A stretch of DNA of 37,359 nt, taken from positions 24,597-61,955 of the forward strand of contig NIVC01000603.1 in the NCBI GenBank assembly GCA_002269645.1. The letters run 5' to 3'. The notes below the pieces were generated by a model. The model saw only the letters and a program-made list of their open reading frames with translations. It ran no database searches and had not been told where the DNA came from. A program made the position numbers and the translations under genes. Shown here piece after piece: positions 1 through 37,359 of this stretch. Source of the DNA: Macrostomum lignano (taxonomy: Eukaryota). Each line of letters opens with the position of its first letter. Within the stretch, counting starts at the first letter, position 1.

Positions 1-308
1 CAGGGTATGTCAACTAAGTCCGGAAAGGGAAACGGATTGTCAAAGGGGTGGTTTCTCTCTCGACGCCATTATTGGATCCACCAACCAGTGTAGAACGATC
101 GATGGAGATGGTACATATTCAAAATATTCACATAGACTTTTGCACTCAAATGATGTGGAGTAACTTCTATTCATCTTCGGTACGGTATTCAATACGTATC
201 GATCCACGGCCTAAATAGGTTTGAAAAATCATAAAAAAACCATCAGATAACTGAAAAGCTTATTGATCGAACTTGATGAACTCCATTCCCTTTTTAATAT
301 GCTCACAG

Positions 309-7140: not shown

Positions 7141-7153
7141 GTGCTTTTAAACC

Positions 7154-9368
7154 TGATGTAACCGCCCTTGTCGCCTGTCCGCTCCGTAGAGAGACGAACG
7201 AGGGGGGGGGGAGACGAGAGAGGGGGCAATGACCGTAGGCTGCCTATGACCGGGCAATGACCTGACGGACCTCCAGCACCAGACTGTCCCGTCCACATGA
7301 TTGATAGCTTTGGTAGTGCTTCGTGACCAGAGGGCCAAGGACCCACATGGACCCCACCTGCAGCCAAGGTGCAAAACCTGCAGCAAAGGCTGCCACCACT
7401 CTATGTGACCTGGCGCACCTGGATCTTTCTACCAGACCTCTCGAGGCTAGAGCCCCGCCTGGGGTGGTTACCAGGAGATTTAGGCTAACAGGGGAGACAC
7501 ATGCAGCCGAGTACAGGGACTCTGCTTGGGGCATGATCGGGAACTCTGGGCTCAATCTGGAGGATTTCTCAGCAGGGGATCCTTTGTGGCTGTGAGCGAG
7601 GCTGACTTGCGACTTTGATTACTAAGAGTAGTATGAGGCGAACATCTACTGTCTCTAGTTTAGATTGCTCAGGGCGAAGGGACGCGTCAGCATGGGGGTT
7701 GCAACCTTCCTACTGCCATTCTGTGCCAAGACTCGCTAATCCCTCTACTGCACGCACACACGGCCCCGCAGCACGCACTCACAGACGAGCTTTGCACGGG
7801 GAGAGGCCATTAACTTACCCAAACTTCCCTATGCTTTGCCACCCCGGGAGAAAGGCTTAGCAAGCCATGAGTGAAATGATGGTGAAAGAGTGAATAATGA
7901 TGAGGTTAGTTAATAGTTAATAATTAGGCCCTTAGGCAAATAACCAGGCAATTAGGCGGCTTCACTATTGAGTAAAAATACAGCAAAAGGTACGGTATCA
8001 CAACTGGCTCAGCCCTCTAATCAGACAATGGAAAATAGGCAAACCCCGGATAAGCAAAGGCAATTAGAGCACAAATCAGTAACAGGAACTTACCGGCAGC
8101 TGCACAGAGAGAGAGAGAGAGAGAGAGACGGAGTGACCGAGGGTGGCTGTAGGCTGCAGTCAGGCGGACAGTGAAGCGGCGATGCGCTGAAGCGACGAGG
8201 CGCTGGTGTAGATCAGGCGAAGCTGATGATGCTGGGCGGTGTCAGACCGCTGGCCAATAGGCGAGCTCACTTGGGGAGCTGAAGATAACTTGGCGGTATC
8301 AGACCGCAGACCGGCAGGGATTCGTCTTATAGACGAATGGGTCAGAACTCAGTCTGACGGCAAGTCTAAAGAAAGACTAGGAGCCCGAAGGTGGGCAAAA
8401 GTTGAGTCTTCTCATGCCGAAAACCGCCTCCTTTTATAGCCTTCCCAGCCGCCGCTCCAAGGTCGTTTCCATGGCTCCCTCTCTCTGATTGGCTGCCGGC
8501 CGAATGACGTCAGAATGAGTCATGATGAGAAACATGAGACCGGCATAGCAACATGAGAAATAGGGAAATTGCGCAATCCGGAGGTGGGGTGGGGGGATAA
8601 TTGGCGCAGCGGGTGGTCGCGAAAGTGTTGCGCAAGCAAACATTGAGAACAATAGGGCTGGGGTCGAGAACAAAGGAATTGGAAATCGGGGATAATTGGG
8701 GAGAATCGAGAACAATAGAAAAGCAAACATTGGAGAAAAGGTGATAATTAGGTGCGAAAACGAGAACAAAAGAAAGAGAAAATCGGAGAAAATGTGATGA
8801 TTGGTGGGGTAAAGAGAACAAAAGAATCAAAAACGAGAACAATAGAAGCGGAGGTGGGTGGGTGTCGCATGAGAAATTTGGGGAGGAAAACAATAGCATG
8901 AGAAAAGGTTGCGCAAGAGAGGGGATGAGTCATCGATGAGTCATCGAGGGGAAGAAGGGGTCACACGACTTGCGTCACCGTTTGGGAGTTTGGGAAGGGA
9001 TGGGAGGTCGATGAGCACACAAAATACTGTAAGTAGACGCAGAGAAAGAGGGGACAGAGCAGGAAAATAGTGCAGAGAGAGACAAAGAGAGGGGGGATGG
9101 GGAAAGTACAAGAAGACTAGGGTGGAGCGCAGGGGAGATAAGGTAGAGGGGAGGTACAGAGAGGGATAGGGAGCTCCGGAAAGGCAGGTGTGGCGGCAGG
9201 GGAGACGGAGCCAAGGCAGCAGGAGGGTGCAGCAGAGCGGGAGTCTCCAGGCCTGGCCGGAGACCTAACCGAGTCTCGACAGCTCTGCGCAGGGGAGGTG
9301 CACGGGATAGGAGGCACCTTCGAAAAAGTTCCCATGCCCTATCCCGCGACCAGAGCGTGGTTACATCA
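7154..9368 (-). mobile_element. Solo-LTR-like element (Gypsy-type ends), 2215 bp
   Basis: Perfect 10-bp inverted termini TGATGTAACC (7154-7163) and GGTTACATCA (9359-9368), i.e. TG...CA. 4-bp target duplication AACC at 7150-7153 and 9369-9372. Internal minus-strand Pol II promoter motifs and no recognisable coding domain. Confidence 0.75.
8431..8522 (-). promoter_or_regulatory. LTR promoter: TATA box, CCAAT box, CRE and AP-1 sites, oriented antisense to copy B
   Basis: Minus strand TATAAAAG (8438-8431), CCAAT (8492-8488), TGACGTCA (8505-8512), TGAGTCA (8516-8522), with further TGAGTCA at 8926-8932 and 8937-8943. Confidence 0.6.
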
Positions 9369-9389
9369 AACCAATGAGATATAGTCAAG

Positions 9390-10460
9390 TCAGTTGGCAC
9401 GAGACGGGCAGGTTCGAGCCTGGCCAATCCAAACCAAGAAAGTTCGACAGAGAGAGAGTTGGAGCGCGCTAACCCGGCGAGACAAGCCATGCACAGCCGC
9501 CCTTGTATCCGAATCCCGAACAGATAGGTAGCGAAACACCGAGTTGTCCTTCCAGTCACCCAGCTTCTTGATGATCATCAGCAGTGGAACACCGAGCTGC
9601 ATGGCTGCTGTAGCGCCGCGCCGCCGCAGCCTGTGGCTAGTGAACTCACGTGGTGACAAACCCGCCGATGTGTACAGAGTGCGAAGCCGGCCATCAAACC
9701 TGCTAGCCGTCAGAGGCAAACATCCCGTTGCCGACCACGTGGAGAACAGGTGAACCGGACGCGGCGCCTGGCCGATTCGGTTTGTCCGTAGCTGCCGCTC
9801 GAGCGCACGGAACGGGCACAGGACACCCAAGCTCCCATCAGGCAGTTTCGGAAGAAACACTCGCTGAACTCGGTCGCCAAACTGGTTGGTCTTTGAATGC
9901 CGTACGGTGAGCTCACAGTCGCACTTTGAAAAGACGATGTTTGATGCCGCCAGGTTGCACCACAGATCTAGCCGCTCCGATTGCATCCGATCACATTCGC
10001 TTTCCGCAGCATACCCCACCAGGCTGCCAGAACAGCTGCCCAGAACGCGATGTCACTCTTCTTTCGTTGGTCCAGGTGGGCGTTCAGCTTGAGGAGATCT
10101 GCGATTCTGAGGGGCTCCCTTGAGCACTGCTACCGACTGAGACATCAGCGAAGACCACAGACCACAACGCACCAGCTTAACCATCGGCGACTCACACGGG
10201 TCCGGCCGACCGAGGGCTCTGAAGTACAGCGAGACCGCGTTAGCGTACGCCTGGCAACTCCGAAAGACTGACAGCCGGTGAACAACTCGGCCACTTACAC
10301 GGCCACGTGCACCGGCTGCGCGCGCACCGGTGTCAAGTGCTAGGAGTTGCAAAAACACAGCCAGGACGCGAGCTGCGACCGGTAACTCCGCTTTGTGTGG
10401 GGCCAGCAGGGCCGAACGGAGACAGCAGGGCAGAAAGCATGGCTGGCGATTTCATTAAAA
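9390..10460 (-). pseudogene. Tyrosine recombinase of the YR retrotransposon (frameshifted)
   Basis: Motifs across frames: TKRSYRSQ..WLCFC, YANAV..GRPDP, FWAAVLAAWWGMLRKAN (box I Arg near 10005), HSKTNQFG, LCPFRAL, FTSHRLRRRGAT (H-x-x-R), LGDWKDNSVFRY (catalytic Tyr 9528-9530). Confidence 0.9.
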
Positions 10461-10467
10461 CAGCAGT

Positions 10468-12014
10468 TTACAGTGCCATACACTCAAAATAAAAATCGCG
10501 CATCTTGCCTACCGCGTGCAGCCGAGAGCACGGGTCCGCAAAAACGAGGCACCAGCCAGGCATATGAAAAGTGCGCACCTCAACCCCACGCCTAACAGCA
10601 ATGAGCATGGCAGTCTGGAACAGCGGCTGCAACTCAGGCTGCCGGCAGCAACCTCTGTTATCATACCAACAGCCGCGACTACGACCGTAGTAGACCACGA
10701 CCGAACCGTCATTTAAAAAGACACTCCAGCGAACCATAGCCAATAGCGGAACAATAGCGTCTTTGTACGTGATATGCTTGTCTTTAAACTTTCCTCCAGC
10801 ATCCAGATCCCAATTGACATACAGCCAATCCATCATTCCGCTACCATTGCGCAAAATGGCACCACCACCAGCACTGCTGGCATCGGTTTCGATGATCCAG
10901 CCGTTTGTGCGACTTCTCCAAAGCTGAAAATCAGGCAGCTTCAGAAGGGCACCGCGCCACCAGAGTAAAATACGCACAGTGTCAGCGGACACTCGTACTT
11001 TGTGATGTGGCTTTTCCAGGGCATTAGGCAAGTCGAACAGGGGCCTGAGGAAGCAACTCCCAGCGTGCACCACTTGGACGACCCAGCTGAGCTTGCCACA
11101 AAGCGACGAAAGCTGGCGTTTCGAGAGACGCCTGCTCTGCGAGAAATTAAGCAGTGTGGTGCGCATTTCCTCACACTTTCCCGCCGGCACACTAAGAACT
11201 CCACGGACAGTATCAATCTTCACACCGAGATACACCAAGCATTGCGTAGGTTCAACCACTTTGTTCCAATTGACACCAAAACCCAACTGGCGAACCAACT
11301 TCATCAGTTCTTTCAGGGCATCCATACACTCCTCCTCGCTCTCGGCCGCAACCAGAAAATCATCCAGGTAGACCGAACTATTGGCCACACCGGTCGCACC
11401 ATCATCCTCTTGACCGCTTGAGTAAGCCGGTAGAAAATCTCGACCGAGGCGCAGCTACCAAAGGGTAGCCGGGTGTCGATTAGCCATGTCAGATCACGGT
11501 TGCCTTTAAAGCGCTAACCAATGCCAGTCGCCTGGTAATCATCCGGATGAATCGCCACACTTCTGTAAGCTTGCGACAAATCAAGCTTTGCCATGAACCA
11601 GCCCTTGCCGATAGAGGCTGCAGCCTTCTTGACGGACTCAAACTTAGGGCTCAGCTTCCTCGTATAAGTGTCTTTTACCGAGTAGCCCGGAGGCGTGCTG
11701 CAGTCATGAATAAGTCGAACCTTCCTGTTATCCTTGGGAATAGCTCCCAGAGGGCTGACCATCGTCGGCTTCTCAGGCACCACCACGTATCTGCCATTCT
11801 CAGTCTCTTCCTTAATTTGCAGCTTCGCAGAGTTCAGTTCTTGTCGAATGGTTCGCCTCATGGTGGGCCTCAAAACAGATACGGCAAACATGTCGGAATT
11901 TGCAGCTTGAAGTGCAAGTAGATCTCTAGCCCGTCTGCCGTTCTGAGGCTCTTGGGGTCTATTGGTTTTGAAAACGCTGCTGCCATGGCTGGGGCAATGA
12001 CTTGCTGACTCCAT
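10468..12014 (-). pseudogene. Reverse transcriptase / RNase H of the YR retrotransposon (stop plus frameshift)
   Basis: SPLGAIPK, RLIHDCSTPPG, MAKLDLSQAYR, then TAG at 11514-11516, then DTRLPFGS, a frameshift near 11391, YLDD (11359-11370), KVVEPTQCLVYLG, LCGKLSW and the RNase H motif IETDASSAGGG. Confidence 0.92.
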
Positions 12015-12912
12015 GGTTTGCTCGAGTTTCAGTTCTGATTAAGTGCTTAGCAACGAGTTGGAAAGACTCCTTGCCCCAGCACATACCAGTTTCAGCTTGC
12101 CTAGTGCGTTAGTCCTCTTCAAAACGGTTCACCTGAGCAAGGCCGAAGCCCGCGTCAAACAGCTCGCCTATCTGTATTGAGTAGCGTAGGTGATTCATCA
12201 AATCAGTCGTGTCGGCAATTCCATTCCTATTAGTCACCAGGGCACCATCCTTGATCATTTGCATCATCAGCCTGCCATTGCCTACCAAATACTGCGCTGC
12301 TGTGATGCTATTATGTTTTCTGCTCTTGTAAGTGATTCGGCCACCAAAATCATTAGCCAGCACCTCTTTCTGCTCAAAGCCGTCAAGGAAATCACGAATC
12401 AGGAGAGCCTTACGCCTGCCCGAACACTCCATCCGTTCATTAGCCCTGTTCCGTGACAACAATCTACCAAGCAGCTCATTGCCATTATCTTCCTGGTCTA
12501 ATCCAGCATCATCCCACACTTCAGGAAAGCAACTGGGGGCAGCAGGCTTGGCACACTCACCGCGATTCATAGGATGGACACTCGCGTTGCAGATCTCCGA
12601 TCTCCCTCTTGAGTTTAGCGGCTTCCTTGTGTAGCTGCAACAGTCTGATCTCCTCTTCCACCTTCGCGATGTCCTCGTCCAGGCCCGCCGCCGACTCCCG
12701 AGCCGCCTCCGTACTGATGTTGTCGTCTGCATCGGCTTCTTGCTCATATTGCTCCATGTTCTGCAATAGCGAGTCTGTTCACGACTGGTCTGGGGCCGCG
12801 AGCAAGGCGCTGACAAGGTCGGCCTTATTGCCCGACTGCTTACATTAGCGTGGGCACACAAGGCTTGCAGAGCCACCTTGCTCAGGTGCATGAGTTTCAC
12901 GCGGTCCGCCAT
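11850..12912 (-). pseudogene. gag-like ORF of the YR retrotransposon (stops and frameshifts)
   Basis: ITAAQYLVGNGRLM, HLRYSIQIGEL, FEED*RTRQAETGMCWG (TAA at 12109-12111 where Tyr is expected), and a C-terminal Cys/His knuckle CKFRHVCRICFEAH (11863-11904) overlapping the RT start. Confidence 0.7.
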
Positions 12913-13262
12913 TGCAAAAAGAATCGATACGCACTTGGCAGGCCATAGGCAGCCCGCCCCACATTAAATAAAGGCACATAAACCGGGGGCACGGGACCAA
13001 AGGCCCGGCCCACCACCCCCCTGCACCAACGCACAAGAGCCACCCCCACTGGTTTAACACCCAACCAAGCTACGCCCGGCCGGACCAGTTATTATTTAAG
13101 CTCAATCATCCCTCTTATTTGCAAAAAAGTTGCTGTGCAAACATCTGCTGTGCAGAAGTCTGGCCCAGCCAAATTAACCAATAAATCCGCCTTAATTCGA
13201 TAACTGAAAAGCTTATTGATCGAACTTGATGAACTCCATTCCCCTTTTTAATACGCTCACAG

Positions 13263-14120
13263 ACCCGCCATCAAGCGCATCAATTTCTGTACTCAATCTG
13301 CCAACCTGCGAGAGCTCATCCGACGTATTGGTACAGTTCGCATCGTCTGCATCTCTACCAGTGCCCGAGCACAGATGCGGCGCTGTTGGTGGCGGATTGG
13401 AAGTGCGAAACCTCACGCAGCTGTCATTTGTAAATTGCTTGCATTTTGCACTTTCACACTATGAGTGACTATGCGCTGACATGCTGACCAGCGAGCTTCA
13501 TCAATTCCAGAGCTCGAGTGGAGACGGTTGGGTCAGCACGTGGGCACTGGCGATCGGGGGGAAGCTGAGCTCAGAGTGGCTTGTGGGCCTCGTCGAGTGC
13601 AGCGCAGTGCAGAATCTGCCGCCGGAGATCCGGTTCAAGGCCGAGCACAGGGCCTCAGCTTGCTACAGCTGCGGCAATCACAAAGGTCTCATCAAACGTG
13701 ATGTGAAGTCCTTACACATGTACATTTCACAGTTCCTGTACGGATTTCTAACAGCAACTGCTCTGCTAAGTGTGCTCTTGCTTGTCTTGGGCTCGGTGAG
13801 TAACCCCTCTCTCTACATTATATTTTCCGTCTCTGTGCTCTAAGCTGCCGTGTTGCATCTGCTAACTTCAGTTTGCAGTCATCAAATTCAGAGAAAAGAA
13901 GTCGTGGACAAAACAAACTATTCCAATGGTAAGCTTTGATTTTCTCAATCTGTACAGTCGACTCAAACTGTGACAGCTAAAGTTCGAACTCTTTTCGCTT
14001 TAGTCTGATCGATCCGAGACGCCCGGATCTGGAGCACCGGTTGCTACCGTTTCTGCTGTCATGGAGTATGAGAACTCTGGTTACAACCTGGAGGATGCTA
14101 CTGGTGTCTACGTGACCTGA
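13263..14120 (+). CDS. Receptor copy B, coding exons 6-9: Ig3, TM helix, Tyr-rich tail (continuation of 4728-6949)
   Basis: Exons 13263-13429, 13511-13795, 13872-13928, 14004-14120. Exon 5 (phase 1) joins to give VL|YPPSSAS. The joined CDS is about 1809 nt (602 aa plus stop) with no internal stop. Confidence 0.8.
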
Positions 14121-14139
14121 GGGTTTTCAGGCTGTCAAA

Positions 14140-22507: not shown

Positions 22508-22760
22508 GGGGAGGCCGCATCCTAGTGGTCTCTCATGTGCCAGCGGCCCAGGCTCGATTCCAAGTGCAGTCACATCAAATTTGGGCTAAATTGGAATCTC
22601 GACTTGGCTCTGCTCGTGCAATTTACGCCCTTGAGTGCCAACCCACAAGGCACAGTGAAGTGTAAATGCCTGACGATAAATAAAGTTAGGGCCGCTGTAC
22701 ACTCCTGTGTGAGTGTGTGCCTGTGCGTATGACTGCGTACGTATCCGCGCGCTTGTGTGC
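22508..22760 (+). mobile_element. tRNA-derived SINE-like insertion splitting the relic Ig exon
   Basis: A-box-like CCTAGTGGT (about 22521-22529) and B-box-like GGCTCGATTCC (22551-22561), followed by an unrelated body and a TG-rich tail. Boundaries are approximate. Confidence 0.45.
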
Positions 22761-22950
22761 CTGCTCAGGGGAGTCAGCGGAATGGGCAGAAATGCCTCTC
22801 GCCGGTTGTGTGACAATGTCGCTTAAAGTGCGTCAGGGTGCCCACAGCCGCCTCTCTACAACTGAAAGTCGCAGCACTCGGAACACAGGACGCGACACTT
22901 GCCAGCTGGGCTCTGCTAACAGCTCACCCTAGAAGACATTGGCTTGTTGA

Positions 22951-23287: not shown

Positions 23288-24665
23288 TTTGAGAAACAGA
23301 ATGTTCTCTAGGGCAGCTTCTGTCACTGTTGCTGAGTGAGATGTTTATCGAGCAAGAGGCCGATCCCTGTTTTGAGAGCATTCTGTGTTCAACTGTGAAG
23401 CAATTACCGATTTGGCCTTCCTATGCAAACCCTCCGTCGAACTTGTCTATCACTGTGTTGAGGCCGAAGACCTGCCAAAACCTGTCTGAAGTGACGGCGA
23501 CTCGAGCTGAACTTGGAACAGAACAGCAGCGTGTGCAGCTAAATTGCAGCCGACTTCGCAATTCTTTGAAAGCCACACAGCAAGCAGCCGCAGATGAAGA
23601 ACCTCAAGATGCTGGCTCCGCCATGGTACCTACTGATGGTACATACGGATGCGTATCATTTAGGCTCAATTTTCTTGTTGGTTTAAGCAAATACAAAGTG
23701 CCTATTTGGTATCTGGAAAGCTCAAACAATTTCGTAACTTCGTTTCCCAAAAGTTCATCCCCAGCAACCCCTTGAGCCCAGCAACCCCCTGGAGTACAGC
23801 TATGCTCAGAGCTTCCGGCTGCGCTTTCGGTCTCAACGATTAACTGGGAATCTGAGAGCGAGTGCACCGTGTAATTGATAATGAGGCCAATTTCAGTGTG
23901 ATGACATGTGATTTGTGCTGGTGCGTTTGAAGGCGGCTTAAACGACCCCCAACTCATCTGGGCTTACAAACGCGGGCTGTACATGCCTGACGATCAGACA
24001 CCTTGTGAGAGCGCAAGTGTAACTGTGAGAATACATGAATCCGTGTACGTGCGTATGAAAGATTTTAAACTTAATCAATAGCCGAATATCGATAATTCAT
24101 TCCAATTTGTCCCTACGCTTGTATCAATGCTTTCTCTTCTTTCTAAACTGATTAATTGAAATCAAATATTCTTTTTGAATGATATTTCAGTCTGTTAACA
24201 GTAAAAGTTTGTTAAATTTAATCGGATTTTCCGAGTCTTCATCCAGATCATTTCTCATCATACTTCATATCCATTTTTCTTGAAACAAAAGAATATGTTC
24301 AAGTGGTGTCATTTGTTAAATTACATAATGCGACATTTGTACCTGCAGAGACGGCCAAGCAAACTCAGTCCCCGACCCATCGGAGCCAGGAAACCCAAAT
24401 ATGATTTTCGTCGCTTATTCCAAGCCAAGTTCAGTTTGGCTAAGCTGCAGCCAGACAGAGAGTTTGTAAACATTTTGTTTCAACTTGCAGTCTTATACAC
24501 AGATGGAACTTGTAGTCACCACCTGCCGGAACAGAACTTGCGACTGCAGCCCCGCATCAATGGTTTCTGCAGCCATATAAAAAAGCCACGACACAAAATG
24601 GATTCTTTTTGCTGCGCTTGTTGTACTAACGGCAGAATTGCTTTGAAGTGATCAGCAAGTGTCTC

Positions 24666-26834
24666 ATGGAAGCTGCAACGCTGATATCCCTGTTAGGGGC
24701 TGTGCTCTGCATCGCTACCTGTCGCTGCGACTGTAAGTGAAAGCTTTTTAAACCCTCCAGGGTGTTTTTCTCAAGTGAAATGGATTTCTAACTTCTCAAG
24801 CTCCTATGTTGCAGGTGAGGTGCCGATTCGCAACAAGACTGTACTCAACGCCTGGCAGTCCTCTTATTTCTATTCTTGCTTTCACGAGAGAGACCAGCTG
24901 AATGAGAGCAATGTTCTGAACACAAGCCAAAGTTTTCAGTTCATTCACAGCAATGACAAAAAGCATTTTAACGATAGCGGATTTCACTGGTTCGCTGTGC
25001 AGCTGAGTGAGTCAGTGCTCATCGGTTCTGTGACAGTGAAGGGCAGCGAGGGTGAGTTACACCACAGACCAGTTTTATGAAGCACTGATTGACTAGTTGG
25101 TTAACTTACTTGACATAGCTTCAGGGGGTCCGGGCATCCGGATGCAGCGAGGCGTCGCCGCCCATTTTGCGAACCCCTGGCGACCAGGGAAGCTGGTGCT
25201 GCGGTGTTCTGCAGGGAGATCCGGTGGTGCCAGTGTCCGCAGCGCGGTAGCCCTTAGGTAGCGGACGAGCTGGCAGAGATTCTCGGGCCTGAAAACGTCG
25301 GAGAGGTCCGGGTTTGGCCGAGGTAGGTGAAGGCTGTCCTGAGTAAAGGCGGAGCATTCACAGATGAAGTGCTCCGCATTCTCGACACCGGAGAGGCAGA
25401 AAGGGCATCATTCCTCGCTACGGATTTTTCCTGAAGGTAACGATGCCTGGCAAAACAGCCATGACCCGAGAGGTCCATGGTCACGGCCCTGATGTCCCTG
25501 CGGTTGAGTCCAAGCAGGACTCTTGGCTAGTTGGTTGGTTTCATAAAAAACAGCAGCTGCTTTTTGAAACAAAATAACTGAGGTAGCAGCATTCCTGAAA
25601 CCCTCTTTCTTCCGGTATTTTTACAATCTCGTTGTTCTGGCAATAATTTCAGTCTTCTCGGATGCTGAAATGTTCCGCAGCTCAGCTGGCATCGAGATCT
25701 GGACTTCGAACTCAGAGGAGCAACTGTTTTCTGGCAACCATTGCAACTCAAAAAATATGAGCAAACAGTTTAATAAATACCGGAGCAGTTGGAAGCGTTG
25801 CGGTGTCACTACAAATAGGTCGATGAGTAGCACGCGTGGTGGGCTCTACATGGTGGACTGTCTTGCAGAGGTGAGCATTGATGCTACAGAGATTATGTGC
25901 TTAATTAGTTCATCTCACTCGGATCTCAAAATGTTGAGTGCAACATCCCAGGTCCGGTATCTGCTCCTCAGGAGAAACGTCAGCCTGAGCTTCTCATCCA
26001 GAGACTACGGCTATCTGAGCGTCTCAGATCTGACGCTGCAGACAGTGCGCCTGGGTGAGGCTGTGGACTTTTCCAAAGCACTTGAAGACCAGAGAAGCCT
26101 CAAAAGTGGCATGAAAATATCTGATAATATTGTGAGCTTTGGCCTGACTTTCTAGTCATCAGGCTTGTGCACTCTCTGTGCATTGGGGGCTGGCCTTCAT
26201 GGGTCATGAATGACACGAGAACTCCCACGGTAAATAGCATTATAGCATTAAAGTATAAATTTATATGACTTGATTTGCAGTGCCATCGACAGACCAACTT
26301 GTTGCTGCAAACGAAAGCTTCAACGTGAGCTGCTCATGCATTCTATGCAACGGCACGGAGTTGAGCACGAACTCAAGGCAGCTGCAGCTGTGCCAACCAG
26401 ACGGAAACTGCACGAAAACCCGGAAGCTGTCGGTTGTGAAGGCACAGTCGCAGCACTCTGGCCTCTACACCTGCCAGCTTGGCTCTGCCGCAGAGTCAAC
26501 TTCCGTCACAGTGCTGTGTGAGCTGAGTGTCATTGCTTGTCTCCATATTTAAATACAATTAATAGACAAAAGCAACCATAACGTGTTGCATTTTCAGCAT
26601 CCTCGCATGCGCAAACAGCAGCCGAGAACGACAGTTTTGCAGTGAGCTGCACGCTGTACTTCAATGGTTCGGAGATCATTGGTAACAACACAAGCGGCAT
26701 GCAGCTGTGCCAACCAGATGGGAACTGCAGTGCGGGCCCGGAGCTGCGGATCAACAGGGCGCTGCGGCAGCACTCCGGCAGCTACACCTGCCAGGCGAAC
26801 TCCACTCGAGTTTCAACCTTCGTTACCGTGCTGT
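24666..26834 (+). CDS. Receptor copy C, coding exons 1-5 (exons 6-9 are not in the window)
   Basis: Exons 24666-24732, 24815-25051, 25653-26054, 26281-26517, 26598-26834, with the same phases and (exons 2-5) the same lengths as copy B and an open frame. About 10 aa differences from B by eye. Confidence 0.8.
25093..25536. mobile_element. Copy of the intron-2 insertion with 10-bp direct repeats
   Basis: CTAGTTGGTT at 25093-25102 and 25527-25536. Near-identical to 5157-5601. Confidence 0.45.
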
Positions 26835-27050
26835 GTGAGTTTCATTTCAATTTGAAATTGAATGGATAAAGAATGGCATTTTAACTCATCTGAAATGTTT
26901 GTTATAGCCCAACAGAAACTTAGAAAATAAGTTTCCACTTGACTAAAAAGTTTCGATACAGATAATGTTGTCGTTGTGTTGTTGGTATTGTGTTTTTTAT
27001 TTGTTGTTTAAAACTCAAACAACTCTCTTATTTGTAAAAAAATGTTGCAC

Positions 27051-30000
27051 AAGCATCGAACTTGGATCTGGCTCAGCCCGATTAAAGCATTGAACTTGGA
27101 TCTGGCTCAGCCCGATTAAAGCATCGAACTTGGATCTGGCTCAGCCCGATTAAAGCATCGAACTTGGATCTGGCTCAGCCCGATTAAAGCATCGAACTTG
27201 GATCTGGCTCAGCCCGATTAAAGCATCGAACTTGGATCTGGCTCAGCCCGATTAAAGCATCGAACTTGGATCTGGCTCAGCCCGATTAAAGCATCGAACT
27301 TGGATCTGGCTCAGCCCGATTAAAGCATCGAACTTGGATCTGGCTCAGCCCGATTAAAGCATCGAACTTGGATCTGGCTCAGCCCGATTAAAGCATCGAA
27401 CTTGGATCTGGCTCAGCCCGATTAAAGCATCGAACTTGGATCTGGCTCAGCCCGATTAAAGCATCGAACTTGGATCTGGCTCAGCCCGATTAAAGCATCG
27501 AACTTGGATCTGGCTCAGCCCGATTAAAGCATCGAACTTGGATCTGGCTCAGCCCGATTAAAGCATCGAACTTGGATCTGGCTCAGCCCGATTAAAGCAT
27601 CGAACTTGGATCTGGCTCAGCCCGATTAAAGCATCGAACTTGGATCTGGCTCAGCCCGATTAAAGCATCGAACTTGGATCTGGCTCAGCCCGATTAAAGC
27701 ATCGAACTTGGATCTGGCTCAGCCCGATTAAAGCATCGAACTTGGATCTGGCTCAGCCCGATTAAAGCATCGAACTTGGATCTGGCTCAGCCCGATTAAA
27801 GCATCGAACTTGGATCTGGCTCAGCCCGATTAAAGCATCGAACTTGGATCTGGCTCAGCCCGATTAAAGCATCGAACTTGGATCTGGCTCAGCCCGATTA
27901 AAGCATCGAACTTGGATCTGGCTCAGCCCGATTAAAGCATCGAACTTGGATCTGGCTCAGCCCGATTAAAGCATCGAACTTGGATCTGGCTCAGCCCGAT
28001 TAAAGCATCGAACTTGGATCTGGCTCAGCCCGATTAAAGCATCGAACTTGGATCTGGCTCAGCCCGATTAAAGCATCGAACTTGGATCTGGCTCAGCCCG
28101 ATTAAAGCATCGAACTTGGATCTGGCTCAGCCCGATTAAAGCATCGAACTTGGATCTGGCTCAGCCCGATTAAAGCATCGAACTTGGATCTGGCTCAGCC
28201 CGATTAAAGCATCGAACTTGGATCTGGCTCAGCCCGATTAAAGCATCGAACTTGGATCTGGCTCAGCCCGATTAAAGCATCGAACTTGGATCTGGCTCAG
28301 CCCGATTAAAGCATCGAACTTGGATCTGGCTCAGCCCGATTAAAGCATCGAACTTGGATCTGGCTCAGCCCGATTAAAGCATCGAACTTGGATCTGGCTC
28401 AGCCCGATTAAAGCATCGAACTTGGATCTGGCTCAGCCCGATTAAAGCATCGAACTTGGATCTGGCTCAGCCCGATTAAAGCATCGAACTTGGATCTGGC
28501 TCAGCCCGATTAAAGCATCGAACTTGGATCTGGCTCAGCCCGATTAAAGCATCGAACTTGGATCTGGCTCAGCCCGATTAAAGCATCGAACTTGGATCTG
28601 GCTCAGCCCGATTAAAGCATCGAACTTGGATCTGGCTCAGCCCGATTAAAGCATCGAACTTGGATCTGGCTCAGCCCGATTAAAGCATCGAACTTGGATC
28701 TGGCTCAGCCCGATTAAAGCATCGAACTTGGATCTGGCTCAGCCCGATTAAAGCATCGAACTTGGATCTGGCTCAGCCCGATTAAAGCATCGAACTTGGA
28801 TCTGGCTCAGCCCGATTAAAGCATCGAACTTGGATCTGGCTCAGCCCGATTAAAGCATCGAACTTGGATCTGGCTCAGCCCGATTAAAGCATCGAACTTG
28901 GATCTGGCTCAGCCCGATTAAAGCATCGAACTTGGATCTGGCTCAGCCCGATTAAAGCATCGAACTTGGATCTGGCTCAGCCCGATTAAAGCATCGAACT
29001 TGGATCTGGCTCAGCCCGATTAAAGCATCGAACTTGGATCTGGCTCAGCCCGATTAAAGCATCGAACTTGGATCTGGCTCAGCCCGATTAAAGCATCGAA
29101 CTTGATCTGGCTCAGCCCGATTAAAGCATCGAACTTGGATCTGGCTCAGCCCGATTAAAGCATCGAACTTGGATCTGGCTCAGCCCGATTAAAGCATCGA
29201 ACTTGGATCTGGCTCAGCCCGATTAAAGCATCGAACTTGGATCTGGCTCAGCCCGATTAAAGCATCGAACTTGGATCTGGCTCAGCCCGATTAAAGCATC
29301 GAACTTGGATCTGGCTCAGCCCGATTAAAGCATCGAACTTGGATCTGGCTCAGCCCGATTAAAGCATCGAACTTGGATCTGGCTCAGCCCGATTAAAGCA
29401 TCGAACTTGGATCTGGCTCAGCCCGATTAAAGCATCGAACTTGGATCTGGCTCAGCCCGATTAAAGCATCGAACTTGATCTGGCTCAGCCCGATTAAAGC
29501 ATCGAACTTGGATCTGGCTCAGCCCGATTAAAGCATCGAACTTGGATCTGGCTCAGCCCGATTAAAGCATCGAACTTGGATCTGGCTCAGCCCGATTAAA
29601 GCATCGAACTTGGATCTGGCTCAGCCCGATTAAAGCATCGAACTTGGATCTGGCTCAGCCCGATTAAAGCATCGAACTTGGATCTGGCTCAGCCCGATTA
29701 AAGCATCGAACTTGGATCTGGCTCAGCCCGATTAAAGCATCGAACTTGGATCTGGCTCAGCCCGATTAAAGCATCGAACTTGGATCTGGCTCAGCCCGAT
29801 TAAAGCATCGAACTTGGATCTGGCTCAGCCCGATTAAAGCATCGAACTTGGATCTGGCTCAGCCCGATTAAAGCATCGAACTTGGATCTGGCTCAGCCCG
29901 ATTAAAGCATCGAACTTGGATCTGGCTCAGCCCGATTAAAGCATCGAACTTGGATCTGGCTCAGCCCGATTAAAGCATCGAACTTGGATCTGGCTCAGCC

Positions 30001-33000
30001 CGATTAAAGCATCGAACTTGGATCTGGCTCAGCCCGATTAAAGCATCGAACTTGGATCTGGCTCAGCCCGATTAAAGCATCGAACTTGGATCTGGCTCAG
30101 CCCGATTAAAGCATCGAACTTGGATCTGGCTCAGCCCGATTAAAGCATCGAACTTGGATCTGGCTCAGCCCGATTAAAGCATCGAACTTGGATCTGGCTC
30201 AGCCCGATTAAAGCATCGAACTTGGATCTGGCTCAGCCCGATTAAAGCATCGAACTTGGATCTGGCTCAGCCCGATTAAAGCATCGAACTTGGATCTGGC
30301 TCAGCCCGATTAAAGCATCGAACTTGGATCTGGCTCAGCCCGATTAAAGCATCGAACTTGGATCTGGCTCAGCCCGATTAAAGCATCGAACTTGGATCTG
30401 GCTCAGCCCGATTAAAGCATCGAACTTGGATCTGGCTCAGCCCGATTAAAGCATCGAACTTGGATCTGGCTCAGCCCGATTAAAGCATCGAACTTGGATC
30501 TGGCTCAGCCCGATTAAAGCATCGAACTTGGATCTGGCTCAGCCCGATTAAAGCATCGAACTTGGATCTGGCTCAGCCCGATTAAAGCATCGAACTTGGA
30601 TCTGGCTCAGCCCGATTAAAGCATCGAACTTGGATCTGGCTCAGCCCGATTAAAGCATCGAACTTGGATCTGGCTCAGCCCGATTAAAGCATCGAACTTG
30701 GATCTGGCTCAGCCCGATTAAAGCATCGAACTTGGATCTGGCTCAGCCCGATTAAAGCATCGAACTTGGATCTGGCTCAGCCCGATTAAAGCATCGAACT
30801 TGGATCTGGCTCAGCCCGATTAAAGCATCGAACTTGGATCTGGCTCAGCCCGATTAAAGCATCGAACTTGGATCTGGCTCAGCCCGATTAAAGCATCGAA
30901 CTTGGATCTGGCTCAGCCCGATTAAAGCATCGAACTTGGATCTGGCTCAGCCCGATTAAAGCATCGAACTTGGATCTGGCTCAGCCCGATTAAAGCATCG
31001 AACTTGGATCTGGCTCAGCCCGATTAAAGCATCGAACTTGGATCTGGCTCAGCCCGATTAAAGCATCGAACTTGGATCTGGCTCAGCCCGATTAAAGCAT
31101 CGAACTTGGATCTGGCTCAGCCCGATTAAAGCATCGAACTTGGATCTGGCTCAGCCCGATTAAAGCATCGAACTTGGATCTGGCTCAGCCCGATTAAAGC
31201 ATCGAACTTGGATCTGGCTCAGCCCGATTAAAGCATCGAACTTGGATCTGGCTCAGCCCGATTAAAGCATCGAACTTGGATCTGGCTCAGCCCGATTAAA
31301 GCATCGAACTTGGATCTGGCTCAGCCCGATTAAAGCATCGAACTTGGATCTGGCTCAGCCCGATTAAAGCATCGAACTTGGATCTGGCTCAGCCCGATTA
31401 AAGCATCGAACTTGGATCTGGCTCAGCCCGATTAAAGCATCGAACTTGGATCTGGCTCAGCCCGATTAAAGCATCGAACTTGGATCTGGCTCAGCCCGAT
31501 TAAAGCATCGAACTTGGATCTGGCTCAGCCCGATTAAAGCATCGAACTTGGATCTGGCTCAGCCCGATTAAAGCATCGAACTTGGATCTGGCTCAGCCCG
31601 ATTAAAGCATCGAACTTGGATCTGGCTCAGCCCGATTAAAGCATCGAACTTGGATCTGGCTCAGCCCGATTAAAGCATCGAACTTGGATCTGGCTCAGCC
31701 CGATTAAAGCATCGAACTTGGATCTGGCTCAGCCCGATTAAAGCATCGAACTTGGATCTGGCTCAGCCCGATTAAAGCATCGAACTTGGATCTGGCTCAG
31801 CCCGATTAAAGCATCGAACTTGGATCTGGCTCAGCCCGATTAAAGCATCGAACTTGGATCTGGCTCAGCCCGATTAAAGCATCGAACTTGGATCTGGCTC
31901 AGCCCGATTAAAGCATCGAACTTGGATCTGGCTCAGCCCGATTAAAGCATCGAACTTGGATCTGGCTCAGCCCGATTAAAGCATCGAACTTGGATCTGGC
32001 TCAGCCCGATTAAAGCATCGAACTTGGATCTGGCTCAGCCCGATTAAAGCATCGAACTTGGATCTGGCTCAGCCCGATTAAAGCATCGAACTTGGATCTG
32101 GCTCAGCCCGATTAAAGCATCGAACTTGGATCTGGCTCAGCCCGATTAAAGCATCGAACTTGGATCTGGCTCAGCCCGATTAAAGCATCGAACTTGGATC
32201 TGGCTCAGCCCGATTAAAGCATCGAACTTGGATCTGGCTCAGCCCGATTAAAGCATCGAACTTGGATCTGGCTCAGCCCGATTAAAGCATCGAACTTGGA
32301 TCTGGCTCAGCCCGATTAAAGCATCGAACTTGGATCTGGCTCAGCCCGATTAAAGCATCGAACTTGGATCTGGCTCAGCCCGATTAAAGCATCGAACTTG
32401 GATCTGGCTCAGCCCGATTAAAGCATCGAACTTGGATCTGGCTCAGCCCGATTAAAGCATCGAACTTGGATCTGGCTCAGCCCGATTAAAGCATCGAACT
32501 TGGATCTGGCTCAGCCCGATTAAAGCATCGAACTTGGATCTGGCTCAGCCCGATTAAAGCATCGAACTTGGATCTGGCTCAGCCCGATTAAAGCATCGAA
32601 CTTGGATCTGGCTCAGCCCGATTAAAGCATCGAACTTGGATCTGGCTCAGCCCGATTAAAGCATCGAACTTGGATCTGGCTCAGCCCGATTAAAGCATCG
32701 AACTTGGATCTGGCTCAGCCCGATTAAAGCATCGAACTTGGATCTGGCTCAGCCCGATTAAAGCATCGAACTTGGATCTGGCTCAGCCCGATTAAAGCAT
32801 CGAACTTGGATCTGGCTCAGCCCGATTAAAGCATCGAACTTGGATCTGGCTCAGCCCGATTAAAGCATCGAACTTGGATCTGGCTCAGCCCGATTAAAGC
32901 ATCGAACTTGGATCTGGCTCAGCCCGATTAAAGCATCGAACTTGGATCTGGCTCAGCCCGATTAAAGCATCGAACTTGGATCTGGCTCAGCCCGATTAAA

Positions 33001-36000
33001 GCATCGAACTTGGATCTGGCTCAGCCCGATTAAAGCATCGAACTTGGATCTGGCTCAGCCCGATTAAAGCATCGAACTTGGATCTGGCTCAGCCCGATTA
33101 AAGCATCGAACTTGGATCTGGCTCAGCCCGATTAAAGCATCGAACTTGGATCTGGCTCAGCCCGATTAAAGCATCGAACTTGGATCTGGCTCAGCCCGAT
33201 TAAAGCATCGAACTTGGATCTGGCTCAGCCCGATTAAAGCATCGAACTTGGATCTGGCTCAGCCCGATTAAAGCATCGAACTTGGATCTGGCTCAGCCCG
33301 ATTAAAGCATCGAACTTGGATCTGGCTCAGCCCGATTAAAGCATCGAACTTGGATCTGGCTCAGCCCGATTAAAGCATCGAACTTGGATCTGGCTCAGCC
33401 CGATTAAAGCATCGAACTTGGATCTGGCTCAGCCCGATTAAAGCATCGAACTTGGATCTGGCTCAGCCCGATTAAAGCATCGAACTTGGATCTGGCTCAG
33501 CCCGATTAAAGCATCGAACTTGGATCTGGCTCAGCCCGATTAAAGCATCGAACTTGGATCTGGCTCAGCCCGATTAAAGCATCGAACTTGGATCTGGCTC
33601 AGCCCGATTAAAGCATCGAACTTGGATCTGGCTCAGCCCGATTAAAGCATCGAACTTGGATCTGGCTCAGCCCGATTAAAGCATCGAACTTGGATCTGGC
33701 TCAGCCCGATTAAAGCATCGAACTTGGATCTGGCTCAGCCCGATTAAAGCATCGAACTTGGATCTGGCTCAGCCCGATTAAAGCATCGAACTTGGATCTG
33801 GCTCAGCCCGATTAAAGCATCGAACTTGGATCTGGCTCAGCCCGATTAAAGCATCGAACTTGGATCTGGCTCAGCCCGATTAAAGCATCGAACTTGGATC
33901 TGGCTCAGCCCGATTAAAGCATCGAACTTGGATCTGGCTCAGCCCGATTAAAGCATCGAACTTGGATCTGGCTCAGCCCGATTAAAGCATCGAACTTGGA
34001 TCTGGCTCAGCCCGATTAAAGCATCGAACTTGGATCTGGCTCAGCCCGATTAAAGCATCGAACTTGGATCTGGCTCAGCCCGATTAAAGCATCGAACTTG
34101 GATCTGGCTCAGCCCGATTAAAGCATCGAACTTGGATCTGGCTCAGCCCGATTAAAGCATCGAACTTGGATCTGGCTCAGCCCGATTAAAGCATCGAACT
34201 TGGATCTGGCTCAGCCCGATTAAAGCATCGAACTTGGATCTGGCTCAGCCCGATTAAAGCATCGAACTTGGATCTGGCTCAGCCCGATTAAAGCATCGAA
34301 CTTGGATCTGGCTCAGCCCGATTAAAGCATCGAACTTGGATCTGGCTCAGCCCGATTAAAGCATCGAACTTGGATCTGGCTCAGCCCGATTAAAGCATCG
34401 AACTTGGATCTGGCTCAGCCCGATTAAAGCATCGAACTTGGATCTGGCTCAGCCCGATTAAAGCATCGAACTTGGATCTGGCTCAGCCCGATTAAAGCAT
34501 CGAACTTGGATCTGGCTCAGCCCGATTAAAGCATCGAACTTGGATCTGGCTCAGCCCGATTAAAGCATCGAACTTGGATCTGGCTCAGCCCGATTAAAGC
34601 ATCGAACTTGGATCTGGCTCAGCCCGATTAAAGCATCGAACTTGGATCTGGCTCAGCCCGATTAAAGCATCGAACTTGGATCTGGCTCAGCCCGATTAAA
34701 GCATCGAACTTGGATCTGGCTCAGCCCGATTAAAGCATCGAACTTGGATCTGGCTCAGCCCGATTAAAGCATCGAACTTGGATCTGGCTCAGCCCGATTA
34801 AAGCATCGAACTTGGATCTGGCTCAGCCCGATTAAAGCATCGAACTTGGATCTGGCTCAGCCCGATTAAAGCATCGAACTTGGATCTGGCTCAGCCCGAT
34901 TAAAGCATCGAACTTGGATCTGGCTCAGCCCGATTAAAGCATCGAACTTGGATCTGGCTCAGCCCGATTAAAGCATCGAACTTGGATCTGGCTCAGCCCG
35001 ATTAAAGCATCGAACTTGGATCTGGCTCAGCCCGATTAAAGCATCGAACTTGGATCTGGCTCAGCCCGATTAAAGCATCGAACTTGGATCTGGCTCAGCC
35101 CGATTAAAGCATCGAACTTGGATCTGGCTCAGCCCGATTAAAGCATCGAACTTGGATCTGGCTCAGCCCGATTAAAGCATCGAACTTGGATCTGGCTCAG
35201 CCCGATTAAAGCATCGAACTTGGATCTGGCTCAGCCCGATTAAAGCATCGAACTTGGATCTGGCTCAGCCCGATTAAAGCATCGAACTTGGATCTGGCTC
35301 AGCCCGATTAAAGCATCGAACTTGGATCTGGCTCAGCCCGATTAAAGCATCGAACTTGGATCTGGCTCAGCCCGATTAAAGCATCGAACTTGGATCTGGC
35401 TCAGCCCGATTAAAGCATCGAACTTGGATCTGGCTCAGCCCGATTAAAGCATCGAACTTGGATCTGGCTCAGCCCGATTAAAGCATCGAACTTGGATCTG
35501 GCTCAGCCCGATTAAAGCATCGAACTTGGATCTGGCTCAGCCCGATTAAAGCATCGAACTTGGATCTGGCTCAGCCCGATTAAAGCATCGAACTTGGATC
35601 TGGCTCAGCCCGATTAAAGCATCGAACTTGGATCTGGCTCAGCCCGATTAAAGCATCGAACTTGGATCTGGCTCAGCCCGATTAAAGCATCGAACTTGGA
35701 TCTGGCTCAGCCCGATTAAAGCATCGAACTTGGATCTGGCTCAGCCCGATTAAAGCATCGAACTTGATCTGGCTCAGCCCGATTAAAGCATCGAACTTGG
35801 ATCTGGCTCAGCCCGATTAAAGCATCGAACTTGGATCTGGCTCAGCCCGATTAAAGCATCGAACTTGGATCTGGCTCAGCCCGATTAAAGCATCGAACTT
35901 GGATCTGGCTCAGCCCGATTAAAGCATCGAACTTGGATCTGGCTCAGCCCGATTAAAGCATCGAACTTGGATCTGGCTCAGCCCGATTAAAGCATCGAAC

Positions 36001-37359
36001 TTGGATCTGGCTCAGCCCGATTAAAGCATCGAACTTGGATCTGGCTCAGCCCGATTAAAGCATCGAACTTGGATCTGGCTCAGCCCGATTAAAGCATCGA
36101 ACTTGGATCTGGCTCAGCCCGATTAAAGCATCGAACTTGGATCTGGCTCAGCCCGATTAAAGCATCGAACTTGGATCTGGCTCAGCCCGATTAAAGCATC
36201 GAACTTGGATCTGGCTCAGCCCGATTAAAGCATCGAACTTGGATCTGGCTCAGCCCGATTAAAGCATCGAACTTGGATCTGGCTCAGCCCGATTAAAGCA
36301 TCGAACTTGGATCTGGCTCAGCCCGATTAAAGCATCGAACTTGGATCTGGCTCAGCCCGATTAAAGCATCGAACTTGGATCTGGCTCAGCCCGATTAAAG
36401 CATCGAACTTGGATCTGGCTCAGCCCGATTAAAGCATCGAACTTGGATCTGGCTCAGCCCGATTAAAGCATCGAACTTGGATCTGGCTCAGCCCGATTAA
36501 AGCATCGAACTTGGATCTGGCTCAGCCCGATTAAAGCATCGAACTTGGATCTGGCTCAGCCCGATTAAAGCATCGAACTTGGATCTGGCTCAGCCCGATT
36601 AAAGCATCGAACTTGGATCTGGCTCAGCCCGATTAAAGCATCGAACTTGGATCTGGCTCAGCCCGATTAAAGCATCGAACTTGGATCTGGCTCAGCCCGA
36701 TTAAAGCATCGAACTTGGATCTGGCTCAGCCCGATTAAAGCATCGAACTTGGATCTGGCTCAGCCCGATTAAAGCATCGAACTTGGATCTGGCTCAGCCC
36801 GATTAAAGCATCGAACTTGGATCTGGCTCAGCCCGATTAAAGCATCGAACTTGGATCTGGCTCAGCCCGATTAAAGCATCGAACTTGGATCTGGCTCAGC
36901 CCGATTAAAGCATCGAACTTGGATCTGGCTCAGCCCGATTAAAGCATCGAACTTGGATCTGGCTCAGCCCGATTAAAGCATCGAACTTGGATCTGGCTCA
37001 GCCCGATTAAAGCATCGAACTTGGATCTGGCTCAGCCCGATTAAAGCATCGAACTTGGATCTGGCTCAGCCCGATTAAAGCATCGAACTTGGATCTGGCT
37101 CAGCCCGATTAAAGCATCGAACTTGGATCTGGCTCAGCCCGATTAAAGCATCGAACTTGATCTGGCTCAGCCCGATTAAAGCATCGAACTTGGATCTGGC
37201 TCAGCCCGATTAAAGCATCGAACTTGGATCTGGCTCAGCCCGATTAAAGCATCGAACTTGGATCTGGCTCAGCCCGATTAAAGCATCGAACTTGGATCTG
37301 GCTCAGCCCGATTAAAGCATCGAACTTGGATCTGGCTCAGCCCGATTAAAGCATCGAAC
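27051..37359. repeat. 34-bp tandem satellite (GCATCGAACTTGGATCTGGCTCAGCCCGATTAAA)n, about 303 units, running off the window end
   Basis: Direct reading. The only variants seen are C>T at 27091 and single-G losses near 29103, 29476, 35765 and 37158. Confidence 0.99.

What the first reader, a model, noticed from the sequence alone, without database searches (positions are those of the whole stretch)
26990..27120. Birth of a satellite caught in the act: the 34-bp monomer has a single-copy homologue in the sister paralog's intron
Seen: C intron 5 aligns with B up to CTCTTATTTG.AAAAAA..GTTG. B then continues GTGCAAACATC-TGCTGTGCAGAAG-TCTGGCCCAGCCAAATTAA (13159-13177 for the last block). C continues GCACAAGCATC-GAACTTGGA-TCTGGCTCAGCCCGATTAA and repeats it about 303 times. 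The 19-nt block matches at 16/19 at the same intron position, and ATCGAACTTG also occurs about 40 nt further on in B (near 13220). Inference: the satellite arose in situ from ordinary intron sequence after the B/C duplication, a rare case with the ancestral seed preserved next door.
Basis: partly seen in the sequence, partly recalled or inferred. Interest (0 to 1): 0.7.

Follow-up and report, generated by a model that had tools for sequence, protein, structure and literature searches.

The report
Paralog-specific 34-bp intron repeat expansion
One copy of a duplicated immune-receptor-like gene carries at least 10 kb of near-identical 34-bp repeats in an intron, at the spot where its sister copy has one diverged copy of the same short sequence, so the array was probably built in place; this kind of event is already known from human intronic tandem repeats.

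Summary
A 34-bp array (27051 to the window end; 303 units, 298 identical) starts inside intron 5 of Ig-receptor-like gene C. With a 5.9-kb DIRS-like retrotransposon removed from paralog B's intron 5, B and C align up to the array. B 13139-13177 then matches one in-phase monomer (6/7 plus 16/19; 0 of 20,000 random host segments score as well). The next 31 nt of B do not match. B 13209-13230 (AAGC..ATCGAACTTGA) supplies the part of the monomer the first block lacks.

Building the array in place from resident intron sequence is the best reading (about 0.55). The direction (seed to array, or array to relic in B) is not settled. "After the B/C duplication" says little. B and C are 97-100% identical only across a converted tract (exons 1-5). 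They are about 74-86% identical around the junction, which is the level the seed shows.

Spread across the genome, the far junction and read support could not be tested. No eukaryotic genome collection was available, and the window ends inside the array.

This is not a rare kind of event. It parallels lineage-specific intronic VNTRs such as the CACNA1C 30-mer (single copy in chimpanzee, 3-30 kb in humans). Verdict: new member of a known kind, moderate to low interest.

The parts
27051..37359 (+). 34-bp tandem array (AAGCATCGAACTTGGATCTGGCTCAGCCCGATTA). It has 303 full units plus 11 nt and is cut by the window end.
   Evidence: TRF. Monomer parsing gives 298 identical units, one CpG>TpG substitution in unit 2, and four 1-nt G deletions.
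27013..27050 (+). C intron-5 'island' just before the array. It is homologous to B 13099-13138.
   Evidence: Pairwise alignment: 31 matches, 5 mismatches, 6 gap columns. MAFFT agrees.
26841..27012 (+). First part of C intron 5. It is homologous to B 6956-7153: 97% for the first 100 nt, then 90% of aligned positions with many gaps in a GTT-rich stretch.
26582..26840 (+). C exon 5, an Ig-like domain ending ...VTVLC followed by a GTGAGT donor. B's copy is at 6697-6955.
   Evidence: Open frames; Pfam Ig_2/Ig_3; B/C identity 99-100%.
13139..13177 (+). Single-copy homologue ('seed') of the monomer in B intron 5: AAACATC (6/7), a non-matching 13 nt, then TCTGGCCCAGCCAAATTAA (16/19).
   Evidence: (0 of 20,000 random segments score as high).
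13209..13230 (+). Second monomer-like block in B: AAGC, then TTATTG, then ATCGAACTTGA. It matches monomer positions 1-16, the part the seed lacks, and lies 33-54 nt upstream of the putative exon-6 acceptor.
   Evidence: (7 of 20,000; phase chosen after seeing the data).
256..277 (+). Copy of that second block in gene A's intron 5. A/B homology starts at 246.
13099..13138 (+). B intron-5 island between the transposon end and the seed.
13125..13162 (+). 15-bp x 2.6 microduplication found only in B. It overlaps the seed and probably explains its non-matching middle.
   Evidence: TRF at low threshold. C lacks it.
7155..13096 (-). DIRS-like tyrosine-recombinase retrotransposon inserted in B intron 5 and absent from C. 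Boundaries are accurate to a few nt.
   Evidence: ORFs; Pfam RVT_1 and Phage_integrase; alignment break points; terminal inverted arms.
13263..14120 (+). B exons 6-9: stalk or Ig-like exon, transmembrane exon (...FLYGFLTATALLSVLLLVLGS), and a tyrosine-motif tail ending GVYVT then stop. They show that the seed lies in an intron. A's copy is at about 309-1165.
   Evidence: Open frames and splice-site motifs. Exon limits are inferred from the sequence, not from transcripts.

Best explanation
The array is a paralog-specific intronic minisatellite (VNTR-type) expansion built in place from sequence already present at the 3' end of intron 5 of an Ig-domain receptor-like gene.

Shown: the ancestral intron was about 365 nt. 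Gene C's copy now starts a run of at least 303 near-identical 34-bp units about 120 nt upstream of where the exon-6 acceptor should be. Gene B keeps the unamplified state.

Inferred:
- The unit was created by a small local rearrangement, either slippage or template switching at ATC/AAGC microhomology, or duplication of a segment of roughly 70-90 nt followed by internal deletion. This fused two intron stretches that lie 31 nt apart in B.
- The unit was then amplified very recently by unequal sister-chromatid exchange or replication slippage.
- The 38-nt island next to the array, and the seed, are as diverged as unconverted DNA elsewhere in the duplication. The two large heterologies (transposon in B, array in C) probably shield them from the gene conversion that keeps exons 1-5 at 97-100%.
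For: - Collinear homology of C with B continues from the flank through one in-phase monomer and then ends. The island has 31/36 aligned matches. Monomer 1 against B 13139-13177 has 28/32 aligned matches. Monomer 2 against the next B sequence is at background.
- Significance at the pre-defined site: 0 of 20,000, 1-12 of 5000, 3-4 of 1464.
- A second B block, AAGC..ATCGAACTTGA, lies in the right order and orientation within 92 nt. With it, about 30 of the 34 monomer positions have a B counterpart.
- The array edge is sharp, and the only substitution is in unit 2.
- The gene model places the site in an intron.
- The identity profile shows a conversion tract ending near 26940.
- The locus is prone to tandem repeats in general: (TGATCC)n of 1.2 kb versus 6.5 kb downstream of A and B, other minisatellites, and a B-only 15-bp microduplication.
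- A documented precedent of the same kind exists.
Against: - Only the near junction is visible, because the window ends inside the array.
- No genome-wide search for the monomer was possible. The available collections hold no eukaryotic genomes, and the scans found nothing.
- The seed is only about 70% identical over all alignment columns and differs by a 4-nt net indel. The middle of the monomer has no counterpart in the seed itself.
- The route from two blocks to one 34-bp unit needs at least two unobserved steps.
- The phase for the second block was chosen after seeing the data.
- A 12-mer of the monomer also occurs in the neighbouring transposon.
- The near-perfect homogeneity could partly be an effect of assembly consensus.
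Confidence: 0.55

Rival explanations
1. Old array, lost in B. A short or long 34-bp tandem array already existed in intron 5 before the B and C intron lineages separated. B contracted to one (possibly up to about three) decayed units, and C kept the array and recently re-homogenised it. The origin is still in place, but the polarity is the reverse of 'birth caught in the act'.
For: - B has two monomer-like segments 70 nt apart, close to two unit lengths. MAFFT and a gap-tolerant local alignment lay B 13139-13236 over about 2.5 consecutive units.
- The second block is also present in A, so it predates the A/B split.
- The seed's divergence equals the old local divergence, which leaves ample time for array turnover.
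Against: - B's three would-be units do not resemble one another above chance.
- TRF finds no 34-bp periodicity in B even at low threshold.
- The would-be middle unit is at background.
- The array has no degenerate units at its edge, unlike typical old arrays.
Confidence: 0.2
2. Imported repeat. The 34-mer belongs to a satellite or transposon-borne tandem repeat dispersed in this genome. It inserted into C's intron, for example through extrachromosomal circles or a Helitron/MITE-type carrier, at a site of partial similarity.
For: - Most documented satellite sources are other repeats, especially transposable elements (review PMC12692304).
- Insertion of euchromatic satellites at sites of similarity is described in Drosophila (PMC7403614, listed).
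- A 12-mer exact match to the monomer lies in the DIRS-like element at 8004-8015.
Against: - The similarity to B covers a whole in-phase unit plus a second block, far more than junctional microhomology.
- The 12-mer is within chance range (0.11 expected in the window) and its flanks do not match.
- The monomer is unrelated to the other tandem repeats in the window.
Confidence: 0.13
3. Assembly artefact. The join at 27051 is chimeric, or the array length and homogeneity are products of long-read consensus at a contig end.
For: - The window ends inside the array.
- 298 of 303 units are identical, and four of the five variants are 1-nt deletions in a GG run, a typical long-read error.
Against: - A random misjoin would not place the array where the paralog carries a homologous unit, in phase with the array start.
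- The one substitution is a CpG>TpG change at the array edge, which looks biological.
Confidence: 0.07

Closest known systems
CACNA1C intron-3 30-mer VNTR ('TRACT') and other ab initio human-specific VNTRs
   Same: - A unit of about 30-34 bp lies in an intron.
- The homologous locus holds a single copy of the unit, and the expanded locus holds a head-to-tail array of several to tens of kb. Chimpanzee has one 30-mer and humans have 3-30+ kb (bioRxiv 10.1101/311795).
- The class of 467 unique, non-retrotransposon human-specific VNTRs has a median unit of 34 bp and is 61.5% intronic (PMC8327921).
   Different: - Here the single-copy comparator is a paralog, not an ortholog, and it is much more diverged (about 70-88% against near identity).
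- The unit looks like a fusion of two nearby intron stretches.
- The array is far more homogeneous than the human arrays, which carry many unit variants.
- Polymorphism, uniqueness in the genome and any regulatory effect are unknown.
Satellite DNA arising from short euchromatic 'seed' arrays (satellitome / library models)
   Same: The idea that long arrays grow from short or low-copy local tandem repeats by local amplification (review PMC12692304).
   Different: - Those seeds are usually short arrays, often transposon-derived and dispersed at many loci.
- Here the only visible precursor is a single diverged unit in a gene intron.
- Abundance and chromosomal distribution, which define a satellite, are untested.
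Satellite-filled giant introns of Drosophila Y-linked fertility genes
   Same: Tandem repeats make up the bulk of an intron of a protein-coding gene. This rests on general knowledge and on PMC8794474, listed.
   Different: - Those are megabase-scale arrays of simple satellites that are abundant across the genome.
- No local single-copy progenitor is known for them.

Membership tests
Lineage- or paralog-specific ('ab initio') intronic VNTR/minisatellite expansion | Head-to-tail array of a unit of roughly 7-100 bp | tested here: met
   34-bp unit, 303 copies, 99% matches. 298 units are identical.
Lineage- or paralog-specific ('ab initio') intronic VNTR/minisatellite expansion | The homologous locus carries the unit once, not in tandem | tested here: met
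   B 13139-13177 aligns to one in-phase unit (0 of 20,000 by chance). The next 31 nt do not align. There is no 34-bp periodicity in B. The comparator is a paralog; orthologs are not available.
Lineage- or paralog-specific ('ab initio') intronic VNTR/minisatellite expansion | Located within an intron of an otherwise intact gene | tested here: inconclusive
   C exons 1-5 are open and 97-100% identical to B. B and A have exons 6-9 downstream of the homologous site. C's exons 6-9 lie beyond the window end, if they exist.
Lineage- or paralog-specific ('ab initio') intronic VNTR/minisatellite expansion | Unique to one genomic location and not part of a transposable element | not testable with these tools
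   No eukaryotic genome collection is available. Scans for the monomer 24-mer in the metagenome, prokaryote-genome and viral collections found nothing. Within the window there is only a 12-mer match to the DIRS-like element.
Classical satellite DNA | Long arrays (tens of kb to Mb) with high genomic abundance, usually at several loci or in heterochromatin | not testable with these tools
   At least 10.3 kb is seen, cut by the window end. Abundance and distribution are unknown.
Transposon-derived satellite | The monomer is homologous over most of its length to an internal or terminal part of a transposable element | tested here: not met
   Against the only element in the window (DIRS-like, 7155-13096), just 12 of 34 nt match and the flanks do not. 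Other elements of the genome could not be tested.

The most novel reading that the evidence does not exclude
A true de novo birth. The 34-bp unit exists nowhere else in the genome. It was created by a template-switch fusion of two stretches of unique intron sequence 31 nt apart, inside a 40-100-nt island that two large insertions shield from gene conversion. It has only just exploded to more than 10 kb, with the unamplified progenitor state kept in the neighbouring paralog. That would give a locus where the first steps of satellite formation can be reconstructed base by base.
Probability: 0.3. Interest if true: 0.5.

Novelty: new member of a known kind. Interest (0 to 1): 0.33.

Why it matters
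If confirmed with reads and a genome-wide search, the locus is a clean natural example of how a long tandem array starts from ordinary, non-transposon sequence. One junction is already resolved at base level, and the paralog serves as an internal reference.

It also illustrates two secondary points:
- Large heterologies (a transposon in one copy, an array in the other) can fence off a short stretch from gene conversion and so preserve old divergence next to 97-100% identical exons.
- A single roughly 365-nt intron was disrupted independently in all three visible paralogs.

The general phenomenon, a single ancestral unit expanding into a multi-kb intronic array, is already well documented in humans. 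The gain is therefore an additional example rather than a new principle.

Tried and rejected
1. External searches:
   - The monomer 24-mer was not found in metagenome, prokaryote-genome or viral contigs.
   - The exon-5 peptide was not found in metagenome contigs.
   - The concatenated Ig exons gave no protein hits.
   - The transposon's reverse transcriptase gave one 31% hit from a Logan contig.
   - These collections evidently lack this eukaryote, so the species was not identified and genome-wide spread of the monomer remains untested.
   - The monomer string was not found in the paper library.
2. 'B holds three decayed monomers' was rejected as a positive claim. The three B segments are not similar to each other, there is no 34-bp period in TRF at low threshold, and the middle segment is at background.
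3. A relation of the 34-mer to the window's other tandem repeats (33, 45, 52, 27 and 18 bp) was not significant.
4. Two 9-mer matches at 23437 and 23509 were inspected and are chance matches.
5. Hairpin-driven slippage: three tandem units fold as an imperfect hairpin, but only modestly better than shuffles (z -1.5 and -2.2). This is weak and was not used.
6. Rfam gave no hits in 1-27300.
7. I first took 246/13199 for a duplication boundary. I dropped that once exons 6-9 were recognised. It is where A's intron homology is interrupted by unrelated sequence.

Full report
WHAT IS IN THE WINDOW

The window is eukaryotic. CpG observed/expected is 0.7-0.8 throughout, which does not fit a globally methylated vertebrate genome. 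It holds a tandemly duplicated gene family.

A self-comparison gives these matches:
- 246-2386 = 13199-15365 (91%)
- 1190-2809 = 19362-21072 (84%)
- 4374-7100 = 24346-26984 (94% including gaps)

Open frames, splice motifs and Pfam hits give the gene model:
- Exons 1-5 encode a signal peptide and Ig-like domains. In C they are at 24666-24732, 24815-25051, about 25952-26055, about 26282-26510 and 26582-26840. B's copies are at about 4700-6955.
- Exons 6-9 encode a stalk, a transmembrane segment and a tyrosine-motif tail. They are at about 13263-14120 in B and about 309-1165 in A.
- A (TGATCC)n array starts just after each stop codon.

Gene A is therefore seen only from the end of intron 5 onward, gene B is complete, and gene C is seen up to intron 5.

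THE OBSERVATION

TRF reports a 34-bp array at 27051-37359 with 303.3 copies and 99% matches, cut by the window end. Of 303 full units, 298 are identical. The exceptions are one C>T substitution (CpG>TpG) in unit 2 at 27091, and four single-G deletions in the GG of TTGGATC.

In B, exon 5 is followed by about 200 nt of intron. Then comes a 5.9-kb insert (7155-13096) encoding, on the minus strand, a gag-like protein, a reverse transcriptase and a tyrosine recombinase. This is a DIRS-like retrotransposon that C lacks.

With that insert removed, B and C align through to the array:
- CTCTTATTTG is at B 13112-13121 and C 27025-27034.
- B AAACATC (13139-13145) lines up with C AAGCATC (27051-27057, the first bases of the array).
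- B TCTGGCCCAGCCAAATTAA (13159-13177) matches C 27067-27085 at 16/19.
- ATCGAACTTG is at B 13219-13228 and, in the A copy, at 266-275.

IS IT MORE THAN CHANCE?

In a blind scan of the window, the 16/19 block is only the second-best hit. A 12-mer exact match inside the transposon (8004-8015) scores one point higher, and 0.11 such 12-mers are expected by chance.

The location, however, was fixed in advance by the flank alignment. Three tests apply at that location:
- B 13136-13240 against tandem monomers is equalled by 3-4 of 1464 real background windows, all at the 12-mer site.
- It is equalled by 1-12 of 5000 Markov sequences.
- An in-phase global alignment of B 13140-13177 to one unit is reached by 0 of 20,000 random host segments.

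The next 34 nt of B are at background (16,327 of 20,000). B 13209-13246 is again monomer-like (7 of 20,000), although that phase was chosen after seeing the data.

The two B blocks match complementary parts of the unit:
- The seed covers unit positions 1-7 and 17-34.
- The second block covers positions 1-16 (AAGC, a 6-nt extra, ATCGAACTTG, A).
- Together about 30 of 34 positions have a B counterpart within 92 nt, in the right order and orientation.

WHAT THE IDENTITY PROFILE SAYS ABOUT TIMING

B and C are 97-100% identical in every 100-column window from 4374/24346 to 7055/26940, introns included. Identity then falls in steps:

| Segment | Aligned positions identical | All columns identical |
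|---|---|---|
| GTT-rich stretch | 90% (many gaps) | 66% |
| 38-nt island before the array | 86% | 74% |
| Unit 1 against the seed | 88% | 68% |

Intergenic matches between the duplicated units are 74-86%.

The near-identity of exons 1-5 therefore reflects gene conversion, not a young duplication. The seed is as diverged as unconverted DNA. I infer that the transposon in B and the array in C act as heterologies that stop conversion, leaving the short island between them at its old divergence.

'After the B/C duplication' is thus true only in a weak sense. What is clearly recent is the present amplification, or a homogenisation to the very edge: one substitution in 10.3 kb.

MECHANISM

Shown: homology with the paralog enters the array, covers one unit in phase, and stops. 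The array edge is sharp. The locus is in an intron about 120 nt upstream of the expected exon-6 acceptor.

Inferred:
- The unit was assembled from resident intron sequence by a small rearrangement that joined the two stretches.
- Two routes are possible. One is a templated insertion of GAACTTG(G)AT, copied from about 75 nt downstream with ATC as microhomology. The other is duplication of a segment of roughly 70-90 nt followed by loss of the 31-nt and 6-nt spacers.
- The unit was then amplified by unequal sister-chromatid exchange or replication slippage.
- The non-matching 13 nt in B's seed coincide with a B-only 15-bp x 2.6 microduplication (13125-13162), so part of the seed-to-unit difference arose in B.
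- The single strand's own hairpin potential is only marginal.

RIVAL EXPLANATIONS

1. An older array that B lost. This is favoured by the 70-nt spacing of the two B blocks and by alignments that lay B over about 2.5 units. It is weakened by the lack of any internal periodicity in B and by the absence of decayed units at the array edge.
2. Import of a dispersed or transposon-borne repeat. Most satellite sources described are other repeats (PMC12692304). The match to B is much longer than junctional microhomology, however, and the transposon match is a lone 12-mer.
3. An assembly artefact. The window ends in the array, and four of the five variants look like homopolymer errors. A chimeric join would not land in phase on the paralog's homologous unit.

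The decisive data for all three are outside the window and outside the available collections. They are a genome-wide search for the monomer, spanning reads, the far junction, and other paralogs and orthologs.

COMPARISON WITH WHAT IS KNOWN

The closest documented case is the CACNA1C intron-3 30-mer. [quoted passage not shown] It belongs to a described class of human-specific VNTRs that are unique and not retrotransposon-associated. That class has a median unit of 34 bp, is 61.5% intronic, and includes rare 'ab initio' cases (PMC8327921).

Our locus works like these and meets the features that could be tested: unit size, tandem array, and a single unit at the homologous locus. Intron integrity in C is inconclusive, and uniqueness in the genome is untestable here. 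Calling it a 'satellite' is not yet justified, because abundance and distribution are unknown.

It differs from the human examples in three ways:
- The comparator is a diverged paralog.
- The unit appears to be a fusion of two nearby stretches.
- The array is extremely homogeneous.

VERDICT

- Observation: confirmed.
- Interpretation: partly supported. An origin in place is likely, but polarity, timing and rarity were overstated or are untested.
- Novelty: a new member of a known kind.
- Interest: moderate to low. It is a neat, well-resolved example that would become more useful if the array proves unique and the far junction matches the prediction.

Noticed in passing
1187-2383 and 14141-20633: (TGATCC)n hexamer arrays begin about 25 nt after the stop codons of genes A and B. 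They differ about 5-fold in length (1.2 kb against 6.5 kb; 85-88% matches). This is a second tandem repeat that has changed size between paralogs.
   Followed up: partly
7155-13096 (minus strand): A DIRS-like tyrosine-recombinase retrotransposon lies in B intron 5. It has a gag-like ORF (12109-12912), a reverse transcriptase split over two ORFs (10468-12014), a tyrosine recombinase (9390-10019) and short inverted arms (7238-7257 / 12935-12954). A possible imperfect 7-bp duplication (TTTAAAC / TTTAAGC) flanks the insertion site.
   Followed up: partly
1-245: Gene A's intron-5 homology to B stops abruptly at 246. The sequence at 1-245 matches nothing else in the window and ends in an A-rich stretch. 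It may be the end of another insertion. If so, the same roughly 365-nt intron is disrupted independently in A, B and C.
   Followed up: no
4374-7055 vs 24346-26940: B and C are 97-100% identical across exons 1-5 and introns 1-4. They are only 74-86% identical just outside this tract and in intergenic DNA. This is a sharp-edged gene-conversion tract in a tandem receptor gene family.
   Followed up: yes
22357-22929: A degenerate Ig-exon relic ('NLQLCQPSHG', 'DTCQLGSA') sits in the B/C intergenic region. It resembles exon 4 of the family and is probably the remnant of another paralog.
   Followed up: no
21797-22047: Two adjacent minisatellites (45 bp x 2.1 and 33 bp x 5.1) lie in the C-specific intergenic segment. 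They are not significantly related to the 34-mer.
   Followed up: yes
13125-13162: A 15-bp x 2.6 microduplication found only in B (TGCTGTGCA repeated) overlaps the seed. C has a single copy of the motif.
   Followed up: partly
8004-8015: A 12-nt exact match to the monomer (CTGGCTCAGCCC) lies inside the retrotransposon. About 0.11 such matches are expected by chance in the window, and its flanks do not match.
   Followed up: yes
whole window: CpG observed/expected is 0.69-0.82 in host, transposon and intergenic DNA, with GC of 40-54%. This points away from a jawed vertebrate with global CpG methylation. The source species was not identified.
   Followed up: partly
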